Source: Lytechinus pictus (Eukaryota). Taken from it: DNA of 64,000 nt. The notes under the pieces are model-generated. The model did no database searches, was not told the DNA's origin, and saw only the letters and a program-made list of their open reading frames with translations. Shown one piece after another: positions 56,456 through 63,972 of this stretch. Positions within the stretch are counted from its first letter, which is position 1. The number at the start of each line of letters is the position of its first letter. The DNA lies in contig NC_087251.1 of assembly GCF_037042905.1 (NCBI RefSeq), forward strand, positions 21,514,001 through 21,578,000, in the 5' to 3' direction. The position numbers and the translations under genes were made by a program.

Positions 56456-56465
56456 GGCGCGTGCC
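56456..56465 (-). promoter_or_regulatory. Hairy/HES class C site GGCACGCGCC
   Basis: Exact 10-mer, recurring at 60595 and 61678. Confidence 0.6.
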
Positions 56466-59400
56466 GTCCACTTAAGTGTCCAGTCTTTGTTCATCCTCTT
56501 ATAAAAAGTGGGCGTGGGGGTTATACTCTAATATTTCTTAGCACTAATTATACATTTTTTTTTTAGTGAGTGTGTAGTCCAACACTAAGCATTATTGATG
56601 CTGTTATACAGACCTTAAAGCTGATCACACGGAAAACATCAGCCAGTACATTGTCCAATTTGTGAATTTCTCAACATGCTCAAGGGGGACTTTGGTTTAT
56701 ATGCCTGTATGTGACGTAATCCAGAGAGCTGAGGAGAGATAGGGAGATTATGGATCAAATTAAACTCAATATCTGCCTGTTTAAAGACATTTGATCGGTA
56801 TTCAGCGTTCAAGTGTATAAAGAAAGGGGTTGTTTTAAGATTGGAAACTGGTTGGTAAAAATGCCATGCCATCAGCGCTCCATGCTTACAACGCCTTGTT
56901 TAAGCTAGATGTTCTATTGTGACGTCATTTGACACTTATAATAATCTACCGTAGATGAGAACATAGAATTGATTAAGATATGATTGTGATAATCACAAGA
57001 AGAAACGAGGTGGGGATTTACCAAATTAAAGCGACATTGGTATTTTGAATATCAACACTTCTCATTGACTACTTTCTATTGTACTTTGGTTCTTATTATT
57101 ATTTTGTTTTTACTGATGCCTGAAGTATAAAAAAATTATATATATGTTTTAATCATTAAAGTATTTCCCACATATCAACTGAAAGCCATATTGTTTTATT
57201 CAATTACAGTTTGGTCAATGAAATCCGTTTGGGTAAACCTTTTGAAATAAAAATCACTATCAAATCATGGATGTATATGAGTATGCATTAATACAGTGCA
57301 AATGGTTTGAAGGAAATGAACACTGAATAAATAAAAATGCATACAGTAAAAATGACAAATTTATTTATTGAAGAAATCATATGACATCCTGAATTAGAAT
57401 TAAAATAATGTTTAAGACCAATGTATTCATTCGGGAATCGAACTTCAATGTTTACCATCTGATTAGAATGACATTCGTGCATATTTAAGTTAGAATTTGA
57501 GGAGTGAGGAGTTTTTTCACACTTTGGAGGATTTGTCAAAATTTGCAATAAAAAATGTTTGACAAATTCTGAGTTGAAATTTTTACCCCCCCCCCCTCCG
57601 ATAGGCACAAATATGTTAGGCTTATAATATATAGCCAAATATATGCTCATATACGTTTTGCGTTCTTGAAGGTATTTCTTCTACACGTCCTTTCGCGGTG
57701 AGCTAATGTAAATGATAAGTCAATTAAAGATTTGTTTTTTCTTTAAACTTTCTTATTTGAAGAGAAATGGGACGATTTCGTTTCACTGTGCTAAAACACA
57801 CCATGCGTTTCTCCGCGAAACATATCGTTAACCAGTCGAGAAAATAATTAACTGATTAAATCTCGTTACCTTATTTATTGCCGACGCCCCTTCCTTAGCA
57901 TCTGCCGCAATGTCTGCTCAAAATACCTACAGAATGCATCGCCAGCTCGAACGGATTGTCAAGTTATTTGCTTTGAGCTTCTTGAGCTCTCACCCATCTC
58001 TAAGCATCGAACTTGGAACGACCCCGATCAAACTTCTTCATAATTAAAGTCATAAATTAACCGACACTTGACTGCTGCTGTTACTTCTTATTTATGGTGG
58101 TGCCAATATTACATTTCGCTTTCATGAGCGGGGATATGTTTCTCTGTTGATTCCAGATGACTGACGGGGGAAGGGGGTCTAGGGGTAGGGTGTTATTCTA
58201 GGGGTATATCGTAAATTCGAAGAAACGGGAAAAAGACAATCCGAAAAAGGGTAGCCTATGAATTTGAATAAAAAGAATGTCATGATTTTTGTACATGTAT
58301 ACTGCCTAAAGAACGACGACGATGGTGATGATAAATGATAAAAATCACTGGTACTTTTATCAATAAAAAAGGTGTTCTTGCTGAATTGTATTTGAGCCCA
58401 TTTGTTATCAATTACTGGCAAGAAGATTATTCTAAATAGTGATACCTACCACTGAAGGATTCTGAAAACATGATATTGTTAGATATTAAGTTATGTCATT
58501 GATTAATAGATATCAATGAAGGTATTTTGACCAATATATTCAATGTATGAAAAATAATGTTTACAATAACCCGAGTGTAATTCCTGCATACCTCCATCTT
58601 AATAATTATAGCTGCATCGTGGTGTTTGAAAGTTTGCATTGTGACGAAACGAGATATCATCTGATTATCACCGCTTGGTGAGTCGGGTTGCTTTCATGGG
58701 AATTCACATTATTAAAAGAAAGCGGCGCCTCAAAGATTTATTGCAAAGAAATTACCAATTTGCGTTGTCTGTTACCTTCATATTAATGCCATTAATTTCA
58801 TCAATATCATGTAATTGTATGGTCGTTGAAACTGAGGAAAATAAATAAGGACCATTGGATATTCGCCATAATACCTCCTGTTCATTGTTGGAATATTGTC
58901 TCTTAAGAATGATAAAATAAACTATTTGCCCTTTGTACAAAGAGATGCGAGGAAGAACATAAGAAGAAAGAGATAGATAGAGGATAGAGATAGACAGACA
59001 AAAACAACAACAACTGAAAACACATCTTAGGACAAACCACATTTTTTAAATGAAATACTTTGTATTTTCCTTTTTTATCATGCAATTATTTCCTTCACAA
59101 AAGTGACAAAAGAACCCACCAAAACCATCGGCTTGAATATAGGATTAAACACGTGTCTACATGCAGGTCAAATTTATTTCCAATTCCATAATAACAAAGA
59201 AAACTTCAGTAATTCGATCAAAAAGTCATTTTAATGTATGAAAAGGGGTGAGAGGGATTTAAAGATCAAATCATAATTCATTTCATATCGAGGAATATTA
59301 TGAGCAATTTGTGAGTATAAACCCCTTTTGTTATAGGCTTTTTATATGAATTAATATCAACAGTGCTCCTAGCCTTTGACTGCCACAACACTGATAACAT

Positions 59401-60594
59401 CTGGGTGTCTGCAAATTGCCCTCAAAAACATTAAAAAATATGTTTTCCGTACCAAGACTGGTATGTTATATCCATCATTATCTCTGTGGCTAACTCATAT
59501 AAAAATATTAGATTTGCTCTATAATTAACGAACACATGTTTGTTTGCTTGTTTGTTTTCTAACGTTCAGGCGGAGCATTCATTTTCAATAAAATATCCAA
59601 ATAACTGTGGACTATTTGGTTCACTGCATTTAATTACCCAATTAAAAATCATATTTCATCGAAACAATTTAATAATAGGCATAATTTTCTACCTCAGCTA
59701 CGTTTAATGCCTCTTGCGGAAACCATTTGTTATTATTATCACTTTTATCGTCTGGGGGGAGTCATCTCTTGTTTGCTACAAGAAAGGATGGGACGAAAGA
59801 TGACTCTAAAATGCAGATAATTAATCAAAGAAATTATGAAATATATAAAAGGGGTGATGAAAGGTCGTGTAAAAGCTTGACAGATATTCACAAAGAGCTT
59901 TGTCCGGTGCAGCTGCTTCGGCCTAAAGGGATGTAAGTCGGCCAATCCAACCCCTTATTATACCATCCTGGGAGTGAGATGGTGAGTAGGGGGTTTGTGG
60001 TATAGTGATGGTATAAGGGGTGTAAGAAGCATTTGGAATGCCGGTGCAGTTGGGGCGTGTATTCATCAGATTGTCAGACTTAGTGGTTATTGTACAATGA
60101 AATAGTGTTCAAACGGTTGAAATACTGTCTGCTTTTTACTGGCAATATCATTATTAATGCTCTTTGGAAACCGTCCTCATTGTCAATGATAGTAACTCAA
60201 ATTTTATATTAAGATTGTGTTTCTGAGTGTCCTATTGCAACTATGCTAATGTCATGTTGTATTCTCAGTAGTGTTTACTGTCTAGGATAAAATGAAAATA
60301 AGTTAAACTTGAAAAAGTTCTTTAGCAGATAAGAGACCTCTTAATCAATTATTATACCAGGCTGTAGACCTACCATTGAAAATTCTAGGTATTCGAATTA
60401 CATGCCACAAATGACTCGTCGATATAGCTCAATTTGAATTTAAGATTTATTTTATTTCGTTGGTTATTTTTATCGTCATTCGATACTTAAAACTATTCGG
60501 ACATATTCTCCGAGATGGAGTCAGAATTTTTGGAATCAACAAGATAGCGACAGTCTAAGAGGGATCAGAGACCACTACCAGTCAGATAGAGAGG

Positions 60595-60615
60595 GGCGCG
60601 TGCCGATCGCGTGCC
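60595..60615 (-). promoter_or_regulatory. Tandem Hairy/HES class C sites (GGCACGCGCC and GGCACGCGAT)
   Basis: GGCGCGTGCC-G-ATCGCGTGCC on +. Confidence 0.65.
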
Positions 60616-61677
60616 GTCATCCCAAACCGTGTTTACAGCTCGGTCAGTGGTTTCTATTTCTCTCCCCCATCTCTCCCACCCCCTCCCCCTCTCCCCCCCC
60701 CCCCTCTCTCTCTCTCTACCTCCCCTGTCTCTCCATCTATTTATCATTATTTTAGCCCCTTCCCCTCTGTACATTCCTACAGCAGGGCTTACCCCATTCG
60801 GATAGGGAGGGGGTATAGGGGGAACAAACAAAGAACCAATCACGACCAGGGTCTCGCTCCATCTCTATACAACCTGCACGCGACCAGATAATTTTACACA
60901 GGAGAAGCTAAGAATGGGGAACAAGAGAAGGGGCATGAAAACAAAGCCAGTGGAATGAGATAAACGTTATATGGACCTGGAAGGGGTAAAGGATGGAAAA
61001 GAGAAAGGAGAAAAGGTAAAGAGTGAGAGTGAGGATCGGGGTGGGGAGGGTGAAATGGAGAGACAGAGAGAGGTAGAGAGGGAAAAGGAGAGCCAGGTAA
61101 TAGATTGTCAATAAAGATATTGCAACAACCAATGGTATGTGAACAGTAATTTCTTTCTTTTTTTTCATCTTACCGACTGAAATCCTGATTGCCGAACAAC
61201 TACCTGATTCATACCGAGAAAGTCATCACAAAATCTAAAGAAAAGTGACTTTATGTTGCAGGTGGGAATAATCATTTGTCCTATTAATACTGGCAAAGTG
61301 GAAAATACAAATGACGAAACTCCAAGTTTGATTTTCAATTACGATTTCAGGCTCGTCTAAAGGAGATGATCAATCTGGTGAAGGGATGGGTGAATACATT
61401 ACTTATCGAAGGGTTGAGAAAGGGAATCTACCCTTAAAAACAAAGGTTAGAAGTATAAAAGACAAAAAGCTGCATCCCGAAACAACAAAGCCACTTCATC
61501 ATCACTGGTTAGAGGAAGATAGATGGAAAGAGATGGAGGGGGATTTGAGCTACAAGAATGCCATTACAACCACTGCAACGATGTAATTAGTTTCGCCGCT
61601 CTCCTCCGCGCCCGTAGCCGAGAGCCCTAGCAGCTGATGACGAAACAATCCGAGCCTGAGATATGAAAACAATGGTA

Positions 61678-61687
61678 GGCGCGTGCC
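61678..61687 (-). promoter_or_regulatory. Hairy/HES class C site GGCACGCGCC
   Basis: Exact 10-mer between Sox-type AACAATG and CATTGTT motifs, near E-box CAGCTG. Confidence 0.65.
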
Positions 61688-62137
61688 GACTGGGCTATAA
61701 AGTCGCATTGTTCCAGAAGGTGGCCTATAACGCTATTTGAGTACCACACAATGGGACAGTCATGCATAATACAGAAACTTTCACTAACCCATGTGAACAA
61801 CAAAGCTAGCTCGTACCCGCTTTTTGTTTCCCTAAGAAGAAAACAAATTTAGTTTGAACGAATCCAATGCTTTAACATCAACTATTTTATGTTAAATTTG
61901 AAGGAAATGTTGTCTCATCAGCTGGACATACAAAGTACATTTACTTAAGTGGTCAGAAGGGGTGGTGGTGTGAGATCTCTGTTGTTTCAACGATTTACAG
62001 CCTGTTGACTTCCCAAATCACCTTCGTGAATACACACACACAGCGAGCTCTCACACACACTTTCCCATCGCACTCATGAAGCGTAGCGTTAACGAACTGG
62101 CACACCACTGACTCGCGACCAGGCGAACAGCGAACTT

Positions 62138-62220
62138 CATTTGACCAATCAGGTGAGAGCTTATGACCGTCTGGTCTCGTGTCGTGTAATATCGTACATC
62201 CCAGCGATCTGATATTAAAC
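62138..62220 (+). promoter_or_regulatory. Probable insm proximal promoter
   Basis: CCAAT at 62145 flanked by E-boxes CATTTG and CAGGTG; N-box CTCGTG near 62176; TATA-like GATATTAAA at 62211, about 310 bp before the ATG. Confidence 0.5.
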
Positions 62221-62523
62221 TGCTATGTGTCTCATCTCTTGTCACTTTCCTTGCAGCTTTCTCGAGAATCAGCAGTATTCTCACATCACGCTTAGCTCTC
62301 TTGACTGGAGCTCAAATCACTGTTGCTGCACTCTTTGACTTTTCACATTTTTTTTGCTGCAATACAGCTGCATAGGATTCCTCAAGTGCAACCGAATCAC
62401 TATTTTCGTTGCAATATTCTTGAATTTATTTTTGTGTATAGTTTACGGACAGACACCTGTATTTTAATTTTATCTCTTCAAGACACTTTAACTTGGTGCT
62501 ATTTTACCTCAAACGTCTGCAAT

Positions 62524-63972
62524 ATGCCTCGAAACTTTCTTGTAAAACGGACCAAACGGACTGGCAGCGTGACATACAGACAGAGAACTTCTGATGATGA
62601 GTTTGATGATCTTGGCTTTGTGGATGGTGATCTGACTGATGCTTACATCCGACCTTTTAATTCACCAGATTCCGGTTATAGTCAGAGTCCAGTAGCTCCT
62701 ATCAGCCACAAGGATCCATCGTTGGCATTCCAGTTCGACCGAGATGCTGCTGTTCGATCACCGAATGTTCTCCAGGCATCTGGTCCTGCACTTCCCTCGT
62801 CTCATATACCCTTAACCCCGTGTTTCACGACTGGATACACCGCCACCACCATCACCTCCCCTGTAACTCCCAACATTAAGCTGACTTTAAGTGCTCCTCC
62901 AGCCCTGGGCACCAAGCGACCCAACTCAGATTCAGACCACAAGTCACATCGAGCTAAGAAACCCAAAGCAGCTAGAAAGTTAACCTTTGAGGAAGACAAC
63001 CGTTCCCCTGTTCACGGCACAATCATTCGAGAGGAAATCGATGTCGGCAGCAAGTCAAATGCTCTTGGAAGGACCAATGATCAGAACGGAACAAAACTAG
63101 GAGGAGACTTTTTGTGTAAACTTTGCAAAGAAAGTTACCCGGATCCGCTTTCTCTTGCCCAACATAAATGTTCCTGTATAGTCCATGTCGAGTATCGGTG
63201 CCCAGAATGCGATAAAGTCTTCAACTGCCCTGCAAACTTGGCTTCACATCGGCGATGGCATAAGCCCAAACCAGCCAACAACACCAATAGCAGTCAAAAC
63301 AGGTCGACCCCAACGAACTCTCCCCGGATCTTACCGGCAGGTGGGGCCAAAGATGCCCTTAAACATTACCCAACCACCGTCCTCAACATTCCCGATACAA
63401 CAAGGAAGGGTGATAGTGGGAGCGAAGGAAGCATTAGCAGGGGTAGCACACCAAGTCCCCTCCACCACCTGTTCCCTACATCTATGGACACTCCTCGTAG
63501 CACTCCTAGCCCCAATGTCGCCCACATTAACAACAACAACGATACGAAAACTGGTAATGGTGGCGACATGCTCTACCACTGCGACCAGTGTGGACGCAAA
63601 TTCCGCAGACCAGCCAATCTTCGTCGCCACATGCAACAACATGGAGAAGATGAAACATTTCCCTGCCAATACTGTGGACGTGTTTTCAACAGCCTGACGA
63701 GCAGAGCCAAACACGTCTTGACCCATGCCGTCAACAACAACATTGTGAGCAACCACAGCAACCGAGAATGCAGCGACAGTTACGACGAGAGAGTTTCCCT
63801 GGACCGTCTTGGGAAACTTCAGCAAAATGGCTTACCGGGTGAGATGTACCCTTGTAAGTACTGCGCCAGTATCTTCCCAACCTCACCGGGCCTTACCCGA
63901 CATATCAACAAGATGCATCCATCAGAGAATCGACAGGTGATCCTCCTACAAATGCCTACTCTTCGCACGTAA
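62524..63972 (+). CDS. insm1: Insulinoma-associated (INSM/IA-1) SNAG-domain C2H2 zinc-finger repressor, single exon, 482 aa
   Basis: N-terminal SNAG MPRNFLVKR; KAARKLTFEEDNRSPVHG box; fingers CKLC..LAQHKC and CPECDKVFNCPANLASHRRWHKP plus three more C2H2; C-terminal HPSENRQVILLQ. The start is the SNAG Met, not the ORF-track start at 62323. Confidence 0.97.
   Translation: MPRNFLVKRTKRTGSVTYRQRTSDDEFDDLGFVDGDLTDAYIRPFNSPDSGYSQSPVAPISHKDPSLAFQFDRDAAVRSPNVLQASGPALPSSHIPLTPCFTTGYTATTITSPVTPNIKLTLSAPPALGTKRPNSDSDHKSHRAKKPKAARKLTFEEDNRSPVHGTIIREEIDVGSKSNALGRTNDQNGTKLGGDFLCKLCKESYPDPLSLAQHKCSCIVHVEYRCPECDKVFNCPANLASHRRWHKPKPANNTNSSQNRSTPTNSPRILPAGGAKDALKHYPTTVLNIPDTTRKGDSGSEGSISRGSTPSPLHHLFPTSMDTPRSTPSPNVAHINNNNDTKTGNGGDMLYHCDQCGRKFRRPANLRRHMQQHGEDETFPCQYCGRVFNSLTSRAKHVLTHAVNNNIVSNHSNRECSDSYDERVSLDRLGKLQQNGLPGEMYPCKYCASIFPTSPGLTRHINKMHPSENRQVILLQMPTLRT

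What the first reader, a model, noticed from the sequence alone, without database searches (positions are those of the whole stretch)
56456..61687. Cluster of Hairy/E(spl)/HES high-affinity sites upstream of insm
Seen: the exact 10-mer GGCACGCGCC occurs three times in the same orientation (56456, 60595, 61678), each followed by G on +. Variants GGCACGCGAT (60606, in tandem) and TGCACGCGAC (60875) also occur. All lie within about 6 kb of the ATG, and I noticed none elsewhere in the window. A 10-mer with 9 G/C is expected far less than once in 64 kb of such AT-rich DNA. Established: GGCACGCG(A/C)C is the class C bHLH-Orange repressor site conserved upstream of achaete-scute proneural genes. Inference: insm is a direct Notch/HES target carrying the same repressor code.
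Basis: partly seen in the sequence, partly recalled or inferred. Interest (0 to 1): 0.72.

Follow-up and report, generated by a model that had tools for sequence, protein, structure and literature searches.

The report
Conserved Hes repressor sites upstream of insm
A sea-urchin nerve-cell gene (insm) carries a real, far-beyond-chance cluster of binding sites for Notch-pathway Hes repressors. Its core, two sites exactly 11 bases apart, is kept in sea cucumbers, brittle stars, acorn worms and amphioxus, which suggests an ancient direct Notch-to-insm link that has not yet been tested by binding.

Summary
GGCACGCGCC occurs three times (56456, 60595, 61678), always on the minus strand. All five CACGCG hexamers of the 64-kb window lie within 6.1 kb upstream of the insm ATG (62524).

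- **Rarity:** in the 812-Mb genome the 10-mer occurs 162 times and the 11-mer CGGCACGCGCC only 19 times, three of them here.
- **Not a repeat:** the flanks tested (distal and paired sites) are single-copy.
- **Conservation of the pair:** the tandem pair at 60597/60608 (two CACGCG 11 bp apart, antisense to the gene) recurs upstream of insm in Diadema, two sea cucumbers, a brittle star, two acorn worms and amphioxus. That is 8 of 12 species against about 0.01 expected. It sits in a shared module with CCAAT boxes.
- **Proximal site:** 61678 lies in a block conserved among three urchins. Diadema has GGCACGTGCC there, a class C to class B swap typical of Hes/Hey sites.
- **Literature:** DAPT expands urchin insm expression, and human HES1 ChIP-seq binds INSM1 with the motif SGCRCGYGC.

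Verdict: the Hes-target reading is supported in silico (about 0.7), but binding is untested. It is a new member of a known kind, with an unusually old paired-site core. The scan had not noted this motif elsewhere.

The parts
56456..56466 (-). Distal C-box: exact 11-mer CGGCACGCGCC, 6.07 kb upstream of the ATG
   Evidence: The flanks are single-copy. No alignable ortholog was found.
60046..60092 (.). 47-bp block conserved with Diadema (87%), about 0.5 kb upstream of the pair
60595..60615 (-). Tandem pair of C-boxes (GGCACGCGCC and GGCACGCGAT). The hexamers at 60597 and 60608 are 11 bp apart and antisense to insm.
   Evidence: The same pair occurs upstream of insm in 7 other species. Only 19 such pairs exist in the whole genome. 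The flanks are single-copy.
60650..60730 (.). C/T-rich low-complexity tract that lengthens the spacing between the pair and the CCAAT box. It has no counterpart in the five other sequences of alignment A1.
60836..60840 (+). CCAAT box of the conserved module
60875..60884 (+). Plus-strand C-box TGCACGCGAC, 35 bp after the CCAAT box. A counterpart exists in Diadema, Amphiura and Ptychodera.
61473..61740 (.). Proximal conserved block. It holds TAATTA (61584), a CAGCTG E-box (61631-61636), Sox-like AACAATG (61668) and CATTGTT (61706), the proximal C-box and TATAAAG.
   Evidence: It aligns with an 89%-related urchin (L003) and with Diadema L001:8962-9147 at 76%, E 1.6e-35.
61678..61688 (-). Proximal C-box, exact 11-mer. 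Diadema has GGCACGTGCC (class B) at the aligned position.
61696..61702 (+). TATAAAG, 8 bp after the proximal C-box. It may mark an upstream promoter.
   Evidence: Identical in urchin89 (TATAAAG); Diadema reads AATAAAG. The only RNA hint is a weak RNA-like contig at 61860-62009.
62213..62262 (+). TATTAAA (62213-62219) and the 5' ends of transcript-like contigs at 62253 and 62262. This is the likely main transcription start.
   Evidence: The region is conserved with urchin89 and Diadema.
62524..63972 (+). insm coding sequence (482 aa plus stop)

Best explanation
The five sites are binding sites for Hairy/E(spl)-type bHLH-Orange repressors (Hes, HesC or Hey). They are grouped into at least two conserved cis-regulatory modules of insm.

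Proposed mechanism: in cells that receive Delta, Notch switches on hes genes. Hes dimers occupy the C-boxes and recruit Groucho through their WRPW tails. This quenches the activators that sit beside the C-boxes, namely SoxC on the AACAATG and CATTGTT sites and a proneural bHLH on CAGCTG. As a result insm stays on only in single neural precursors.

The core of the system is a pair of C-boxes in direct repeat, 11 bp centre to centre (about one helical turn). That spacing would put two dimers on the same face of the DNA.

What is shown here: the sequence, the statistics, the single-copy status, the conservation, and the presence of bHLH-Orange genes in this genome.

What comes from the literature: insm expression depends on Notch in urchins, and HES1 occupies INSM1 in human cells.

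What is inferred: that Hes proteins bind these particular sites, that repression is direct, and that the pair binds cooperatively.
For: 1. **Match to the motif.** All three 10-mers fit the Hairy consensus ggCACGCG(A/C)C (PMC449821) and the in vivo human HES1 ChIP-seq motif SGCRCGYGC (10.1101/335869).
2. **Rarity.** Three of the 19 genomic copies of the 11-mer lie here. The first 52.5 kb of the window holds no CACGCG at all.
3. **The pair across species.** The pair occurs antisense to insm in the window (-1927), Diadema (-1780), Holothuria (-7214), Apostichopus (-5130), Amphiura (-1280), Ptychodera (-1045), Glandiceps (-1054) and Branchiostoma (-790). Saccoglossus keeps one half intact.
4. **Counts across 12 species against Markov simulations.** CACGCG 67 observed versus 19.8 expected; 10-mer consensus 14 versus 0.19; pair 8 versus 0.01.
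5. **Real-DNA control in the 11 fetched loci, upstream 10 kb versus downstream 10 kb.** CACGCG 62 versus 30; 10-mer consensus 11 versus 3; pair 7 versus 0.
6. **Spacer.** The spacer of the pair (A-N-Y-G-R) is what two abutting Hairy-type flanks would give.
7. **Flank profile.** Upstream sites give gGCACGCG(A/C)C: G at -1 in 34 of 67 and A or C at +1 in 60 of 67. The 29 downstream control sites show no such bias.
8. **Class swap.** At the aligned position of the proximal site, Diadema has GGCACGTGCC, the E(spl)/Hey optimum (PMC1950541).
9. **Other loci with the pair.** Of the pairs I looked at that are not in repeats, one lies in a Delta intron, one lies 2.3 kb upstream of ptf1a, and several lie where no gene could be identified. 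DLL1 is HES1-bound in human cells.
10. **Repressors present.** The genome encodes five bHLH-Orange proteins. Three end in WRPW and one in YRPW.
11. **Function.** DAPT broadens insm expression and a SoxC morpholino abolishes it in S. purpuratus (PMC9629743). Notch/her4.1 and insm1a inhibit each other in zebrafish (PMC12447343).
Against: - There is no binding or reporter data for these sites in any echinoderm.
- The published urchin network explains the DAPT effect through SoxC alone, so repression could be indirect.
- The core of the pair also fits the extended AhR/ARNT element (T/G)NGCGTG. CACGCG is also a non-canonical Myc/Max site.
- Asterias, Antedon and Pecten have no pair within 10 kb.
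- The distal site has no demonstrated ortholog.
- The third C-box of the module is degenerate in Glandiceps, Saccoglossus and Branchiostoma.
- Which of the five bHLH-Orange proteins would act is unknown.
Confidence: 0.7

Rival explanations
1. The sites are functional and conserved but are read by another bHLH factor. One candidate is a bHLH-PAS heterodimer of the AhR/Spineless-ARNT type, which recognises (T/G)NGCGTG. Another is Myc/Max/Mnt, which binds CACGTG and the non-canonical CACGCG.
For: In the pair, the base before CGCGTG on the plus strand is T in 14 of 17 intact half-sites across species, and all 17 fit the extended (T/G)NGCGTG. From my own knowledge, Myc/Max tolerates both CACGCG and CACGTG, so the swap seen in Diadema would also suit it.
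Against: - Diadema's proximal site GGCACGTGCC has no GCGTG core, so it does not fit AhR/ARNT.
- The flanks are G at -1 and A or C at +1. This is the Hes/Hey signature, not the CCACGTGG preference of Myc (the Myc flank preference is from my own knowledge).
- Several insm upstream regions carry perfect GGCACGTGCC sites.
- The other pairs sit at Delta and ptf1a, which are Notch-circuit genes.
- insm expression responds to DAPT.
Confidence: 0.12
2. The sites are real Hes sites, but they serve a different target, or they act only as weak redundant inputs. In that case Notch control of insm would be essentially indirect, through SoxC.
For: The published network places SoxC between Notch and insm, and a SoxC morpholino abolishes insm expression (PMC9629743). 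The distal site lies in a 29-kb stretch in which no host gene was called.
Against: The pair keeps a fixed antisense orientation and stays close to insm in eight species whose surrounding DNA is otherwise unalignable. No ORF of 110 aa or more lies between a retroelement-like ORF at 32-33 kb and insm. Human HES1 binds INSM1, and INSM1 is derepressed even when NEUROG3 is absent.
Confidence: 0.1
3. The cluster is a generic CpG-rich promoter feature, for example a site for a CpG-motif reader such as a BEN-domain protein, or simply chance. It would then have no specific link to Notch.
For: GC content rises towards the gene, from 0.41 to 0.48 in 60-64 kb. The number of CACGCG in the whole window (5) is close to the shuffle mean of 4.75.
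Against: - CpG observed/expected is not raised here: 0.70-0.77.
- The 10-mer, 11-mer and pair statistics are far beyond chance.
- Exact spacing and orientation are conserved across phyla.
- The flanks are not CCCACGCG, which I recall as the BEND3 motif (own knowledge).
Confidence: 0.05

Closest known systems
Human HES1 to INSM1 (HES1 ChIP-seq in pancreatic progenitors, bioRxiv 10.1101/335869) and Notch/Her4.1-insm1a mutual inhibition in zebrafish (PMC12447343)
   Same: Same regulator family and same target gene. The in vivo motif SGCRCGYGC fits all three exact 10-mers. DLL1/Delta is a co-target in both systems.
   Different: The vertebrate evidence is occupancy and expression. Here the evidence is sequence and conservation only. 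I could not test whether vertebrate INSM1 carries the 11-bp pair.
Hairy at the Drosophila achaete promoter, and Hes1 at the Mash1/Ascl1 class C site
   Same: A class C site ggCACGCG(A/C)C sits next to activator sites of a neurogenic gene, and repression works through WRPW and Groucho (PMC449821, PMC1950541).
   Different: As I recall, the classic cases rest on a single C-box. Here there are five sites, including a direct-repeat pair with fixed 11-bp phasing. The target is a SNAG zinc-finger gene, not a proneural bHLH.
Sea-urchin HesC repression of delta (the double-negative gate of the skeletogenic lineage; from my own knowledge, paper not retrieved)
   Same: It concerns an echinoid bHLH-Orange repressor acting on delta. 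In this genome the Delta locus holds 17 CACGCG in 30 kb, including an 11-bp pair.
   Different: That circuit acts in early endomesoderm. The insm sites would act in later neurogenic lateral inhibition, possibly through a different Hes paralog.
Su(H) paired site (SPS) of E(spl) and hes promoters (own knowledge)
   Same: It is a fixed-spacing pair of sites for a Notch-pathway factor, conserved over long evolutionary distances and thought to give cooperative binding.
   Different: The SPS is an inverted pair bound by the CSL activator complex. This is a direct repeat of repressor sites. Cooperativity here is only inferred.

Membership tests
Hairy/E(spl)/Hes class C binding site | Core hexamer CACGCG | tested here: met
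   Five copies, all within 56458-61685.
Hairy/E(spl)/Hes class C binding site | High-affinity flanks ggCACGCG(A/C)C, or the in vivo HES1 motif SGCRCGYGC | tested here: met
   Three sites are exact. 60606 misses the last base (GAT) and 60875 misses the first (TGC). The consensus sequences come from PMC449821 and 10.1101/335869. The cross-species flank profile reproduces the consensus.
Hairy/E(spl)/Hes class C binding site | Class C and class B (CACGTG with GGC...GCC flanks) are interchangeable at orthologous positions | tested here: met
   The window has GGCGCGTGCC where Diadema has GGCACGTGCC in the aligned proximal block.
Direct Hes target cis-regulatory module | Sites are clustered beyond the genomic background and are not part of a repeat | tested here: met
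Direct Hes target cis-regulatory module | Sites are conserved in orthologous regulatory DNA | tested here: met
   The pair is present in 8 of 12 species, and the proximal site in 3 of 3 urchins. The distal site is not shown to be conserved.
Direct Hes target cis-regulatory module | Activator sites (proneural E-box, Sox) lie adjacent, so short-range repression is possible | tested here: met
   CAGCTG, AACAATG and CATTGTT lie within 50 bp of the proximal C-box and are conserved in three urchins.
Direct Hes target cis-regulatory module | The cognate bHLH-Orange repressors are encoded in the same genome | tested here: met
   Five Hairy_orange hits; three proteins end in WRPW and one in YRPW.
Direct Hes target cis-regulatory module | Physical occupancy by a Hes protein (EMSA, ChIP) | not testable with these tools
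   The only support is by analogy: human HES1 ChIP-seq lists INSM1.
Direct Hes target cis-regulatory module | Target expression expands when Notch or Hes is removed, and site mutation derepresses a reporter | not testable with these tools
   The first half is published: DAPT broadens insm expression in S. purpuratus (PMC9629743). Site mutation has not been done.
AhR/ARNT xenobiotic-response element (rival) | Core TNGCGTG retained at orthologous positions | tested here: not met
   The strict core is present at 2 of the 5 window sites. It is lost at the Diadema ortholog of the proximal site, which reads CACGTG. The pair alone cannot exclude this family.

The most novel reading that the evidence does not exclude
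The 17-bp direct repeat CACGCG-N5-CACGCG, set in a module with CCAAT boxes, a Pbx-like ATCAATCA and TAATTA, may be an ancestral deuterostome Hes-response element. It would have been wired to insm before echinoderms, hemichordates and chordates split.

On this reading, its one-helical-turn phasing makes two Hes dimers bind cooperatively. That would give the sharp on/off threshold that lateral inhibition needs. The same paired architecture would be reused at delta and ptf1a.
Probability: 0.35. Interest if true: 0.72.

Novelty: new member of a known kind. Interest (0 to 1): 0.55.

Why it matters
insm/INSM1 is a pan-neuroendocrine differentiation factor and a tumour marker. Its antagonism with Notch/Hes is known in vertebrates, mostly from expression and occupancy data.

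This work gives base-pair-level candidate sites in an experimentally tractable embryo. It suggests that the published urchin network (Notch to SoxC to insm) lacks a direct Hes-to-insm repression arm, which would make the circuit a coherent feed-forward loop.

The 11-bp pair survives in DNA that is otherwise unalignable between phyla. That makes it one of the few invertebrate deuterostome regulatory elements that can be traced to single binding sites. It offers a clean test of whether site phasing matters for Hes repression.

Tried and rejected
- **Dispersed repeat, rejected.** The flanks tested are unique in the genome and no local repeat family covers the sites. A genuine repeat family does carry a similar pair (tataCACGCGcccgaCACGCGttaa; L010-L014, L016, L017), but it is unrelated to the insm copy.
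- **CpG-island artefact, rejected.** CpG observed/expected is 0.70-0.77 in 56-64 kb.
- **Orthology of the distal site, not established.** I looked among distal GGCACGYGCC sites of other species and found no flank similarity, so it is left open.
- **blastn across classes.** A search of the 8.5 kb upstream region against each other class found nothing above noise except the pair itself at E 0.87. Conservation was detectable only through the motif architecture.
- **Raw RNA reads.** X19 and X20 gave no reads on the stretch, so there is no strand-specific start mapping. Only Logan contigs were informative.
- **Literature.** A search for an urchin HesC binding motif returned nothing usable. The HesC-delta cis-regulatory paper was not retrieved.
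Full report
**1. The observation**

The 10-mer GGCACGCGCC matches at 56456, 60595 and 61678, all on the minus strand, against zero expected in shuffles. On the plus strand each reads GGCGCGTGCC followed by G, so the shared word is the 11-mer CGGCACGCGCC.

The two variants are real. GGCACGCGAT lies on the minus strand at 60606-60615, one base from the 60595 site. TGCACGCGAC lies on the plus strand at 60875-60884.

The core CACGCG occurs five times in the 64-kb window, and all five are these sites. The number of hexamers is ordinary (shuffle mean 4.75). What is unusual is their concentration and their flanks. Among GC-rich 10-mers that recur three or more times, this is the only one that is not a homopolymer, a tandem array or a repeat.

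The window is C7:21514001-21578000 of an 812-Mb sea-urchin assembly. There the 10-mer occurs 162 times (reversed control 65) and the 11-mer 19 times (control 14). From these rates I calculate about 1e-4 expected triples of the 10-mer within 5.2 kb genome-wide, and about 1e-7 for the 11-mer.

The DNA around the distal site and around the pair is single-copy. No local repeat family covers any site. CpG observed/expected is only 0.70-0.77 here, so this is not a CpG island.

**2. The gene**

The ORF 62524-63972 encodes a 482-aa protein. By my reading of the translation it has a SNAG-type N-terminus and five C2H2 fingers. It is 76% identical to Diadema setosum insulinoma-associated protein 1a-like, with orthologs across echinoderms, hemichordates, amphioxus and molluscs.

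Two transcript-like public contigs (depth about 28) begin at 62253 and 62262 and run colinearly through the coding sequence. Both starts are 34-43 bp after a TATTAAA at 62213. A weak contig at 61860-62009 hints at a second start behind the TATAAAG at 61696. Raw RNA reads from two runs gave nothing on the stretch, so the start is not firmly mapped.

No ORF of 110 aa or more lies between a retroelement-like ORF at 32-33 kb and insm. insm is therefore the nearest gene to all five sites.

An ORF elsewhere in this genome is 99% identical to Lytechinus variegatus Ptf1a.

**3. Conservation**

I fetched 10 kb upstream of insm from eleven other species. blastn finds no similarity between classes apart from the pair itself.

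Even so, the tandem pair recurs. It consists of two CACGCG exactly 11 bp apart, on the strand antisense to insm. Positions are relative to the ATG.

| Species | Position of the pair |
|---|---|
| Window (Lytechinus) | -1927 |
| Diadema | -1780 |
| Holothuria | -7214 |
| Apostichopus | -5130 |
| Amphiura | -1280 |
| Ptychodera | -1045 |
| Glandiceps | -1054 |
| Branchiostoma floridae | -790 |
| Saccoglossus | -1053, one half intact, the other reads CGCGCG |
| Asterias, Antedon, Pecten | none within 10 kb |

In the window's own genome the pattern CACGCG-N5-CACGCG occurs only 19 times in 812 Mb. Seven of those I inspected belong to one repeat family.

The counts compare with two kinds of control as follows.

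| Feature | 12 species, observed vs first-order Markov expectation | 11 fetched loci, upstream 10 kb vs downstream 10 kb |
|---|---|---|
| CACGCG | 67 vs 19.8 | 62 vs 30 |
| 10-mer consensus GGCACGYGMC | 14 vs 0.19 | 11 vs 3 |
| 11-bp pair | 8 vs 0.01 | 7 vs 0 |

The spacer of the pair reads A-N-Y-G-R. That is what results when the 3' flank of one Hairy-type site (CACGCG-AC) abuts the 5' flank of the next (GG-CACGCG).

Downstream of the pair the species share a module:
- one or two CCAAT boxes;
- a Pbx-like ATCAATCA, in hemichordates and amphioxus;
- a plus-strand CACGCG(A/C)C, exact in the window, Diadema, Amphiura and Ptychodera and degenerate in the others;
- a TAATTA-type site.

In the window a C/T-rich tract at 60650-60730 stretches this module.

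**4. The proximal site**

The block 61473-61740 aligns with an 89%-related urchin (L003) and with Diadema (76%, E 1.6e-35). Sequence just upstream of the block is unalignable.

Within the block, the following are kept in all three urchins: TAATTA, a CAGCTG E-box, AACAATG and CATTGTT. TATAAAG is identical in urchin89 and reads AATAAAG in Diadema. The C-box is identical in the close relative.

In Diadema the C-box reads GGCACGTGCC. This class C to class B change stays within the binding range of Hes, E(spl) and Hey proteins; tggCACGTGcca is the E(spl)/Hey optimum (PMC1950541). The change removes the GCGTG core that AhR/ARNT would need.

**5. Flank information**

Pooling the 67 upstream CACGCG sites of the 12 species gives G at -2 (28), G at -1 (34), A or C at +1 (60) and C at +2 (31). 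That is gGCACGCG(A/C)C, the published Hairy consensus (PMC449821). The 29 downstream control sites show no such bias. The three exact 10-mers also fit the human in vivo HES1 motif SGCRCGYGC.

**6. Context in the same genome**

I inspected the pairs that are not in repeats.
- One lies in an intron of Delta (MNNL, DSL and EGF exons). That locus holds 17 CACGCG in 30 kb.
- One lies 2.3 kb upstream of ptf1a, also antisense.
- One lies in L009, which has the same architecture (a pair, then a CACGCGCC 156 bp later) but no identifiable gene within 15 kb.
- The remaining pairs I inspected lay where no gene could be identified.

The genome encodes five bHLH-Orange proteins. Three end in WRPW and one in YRPW.

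**7. Literature**

- In S. purpuratus, DAPT broadens insm and soxc expression from single cells to patches, and a SoxC morpholino abolishes insm (PMC9629743).
- In human pancreatic progenitors, INSM1 and DLL1 are among 28 genes that are both HES1-bound and derepressed without HES1, even when NEUROG3 is absent (10.1101/335869).
- In zebrafish, her4.1 and insm1a form a mutual-inhibition switch (PMC12447343).
- Reviews report that Notch1-Hes1 suppresses INSM1 in tumours (PMC8576627).

**8. Mechanism and rivals**

The best reading (about 0.7) is direct, short-range, Groucho-dependent repression of insm by Notch-induced Hes proteins. It would act next to Sox and proneural activator sites. The 11-bp pair would place two dimers on one face of the helix.

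Binding, directness and cooperativity are inferred. The alternatives are:
- another bHLH reader, AhR/Spineless-ARNT or Myc/Max (0.12), weakened by the Diadema swap, the flanks and the Notch-circuit company the pair keeps;
- real Hes sites that are redundant or aimed at another target (0.10);
- a generic CpG feature or chance (0.05).

**9. Verdict**

The Notch/Hes-insm link is already known in vertebrates, and the Notch dependence is known in urchins. This is therefore a new member of a known kind. What adds interest is a phased pair of repressor sites traceable across three deuterostome phyla, and a concrete correction to the urchin neurogenic network. A words look-up of this scan's notes on this genome found nothing mentioning this motif or Hes.

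Noticed in passing
L018:4970-4986 (G000 C7:24269269), with L033 and L034: The Delta gene lies 2.7 Mb from insm on the same chromosome. It carries an 11-bp pair of CACGCG in the intron between its MNNL and DSL exons, and 17 CACGCG in 30 kb. In human cells DLL1 is HES1-bound.
   Followed up: partly
L015:5038-5054 (G000 C13:24850137): An antisense 11-bp CACGCG pair lies 2.3 kb upstream of the ptf1a bHLH exon (99% identical to the L. variegatus protein).
   Followed up: partly
L009:4967-5160 (G000 C17:26235686): This locus has three minus-strand CACGCG, including the exact pair CACGCGACCGACACGCG, and a plus-strand CACGCGCC 156 bp later. That is the same layout as the insm module. No gene was recognisable within about 15 kb on either side.
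   Followed up: partly
L010-L014, L016, L017 (mostly G000 C13:10.4-11.6 Mb): A dispersed or segmental repeat carries tataCACGCGcccgaCACGCGttaa. It accounts for 7 of the 19 genomic 11-bp pairs and would inflate naive motif counts.
   Followed up: partly
L032:4306-6844 (G000 C17:24726302): Three consensus-like C-boxes lie 0.4-2.9 kb upstream of a SPRY/SOCS-box (SPSB-like) exon. Another copy of the 11-mer lies 11 kb away.
   Followed up: no
G000 C14:12666937 and L043: A copy of the 11-mer lies about 6 kb from a WRPW hes gene, which could reflect hes autoregulation. I could not fetch the interval.
   Followed up: no
window 62213-62262 and 61696-61702: insm has two candidate promoters. Transcript-like contigs start at 62253 and 62262, after a TATTAAA. 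A TATAAAG next to the proximal C-box (AATAAAG in Diadema) has only a weak contig behind it.
   Followed up: partly
window 63782: One public contig (X1) lacks 3 bases inside the insm coding sequence. This is probably an in-frame allele.
   Followed up: no
window 60046-60092: A 47-bp block is 87% identical to Diadema. It contains TGACAATCTGATGAAT on the minus strand, which looks Meis/Pbx-like, and is probably another insm enhancer core.
   Followed up: no
window 61631-61647 and 61908-61924: An inverted repeat of CAGCTGATGA-type E-boxes, with 260 nt between the arms. Both arms are conserved in the 89%-related urchin.
   Followed up: no
L006:19703-20266 (Antedon, about 9.7-10.3 kb past the insm start codon, about 8.3-8.9 kb past its stop): Four (g/t)gggCACGCG sites are spaced 170-200 bp apart. 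This may be a minisatellite or a relocated Hes-site cluster in the one echinoderm class that lacks upstream sites.
   Followed up: no
window 32259-33565 (-): Two adjacent ORFs with CCHC zinc-knuckle motifs look like a retroelement gag. They are the last coding-like sequence before the 29-kb interval upstream of insm.
   Followed up: no
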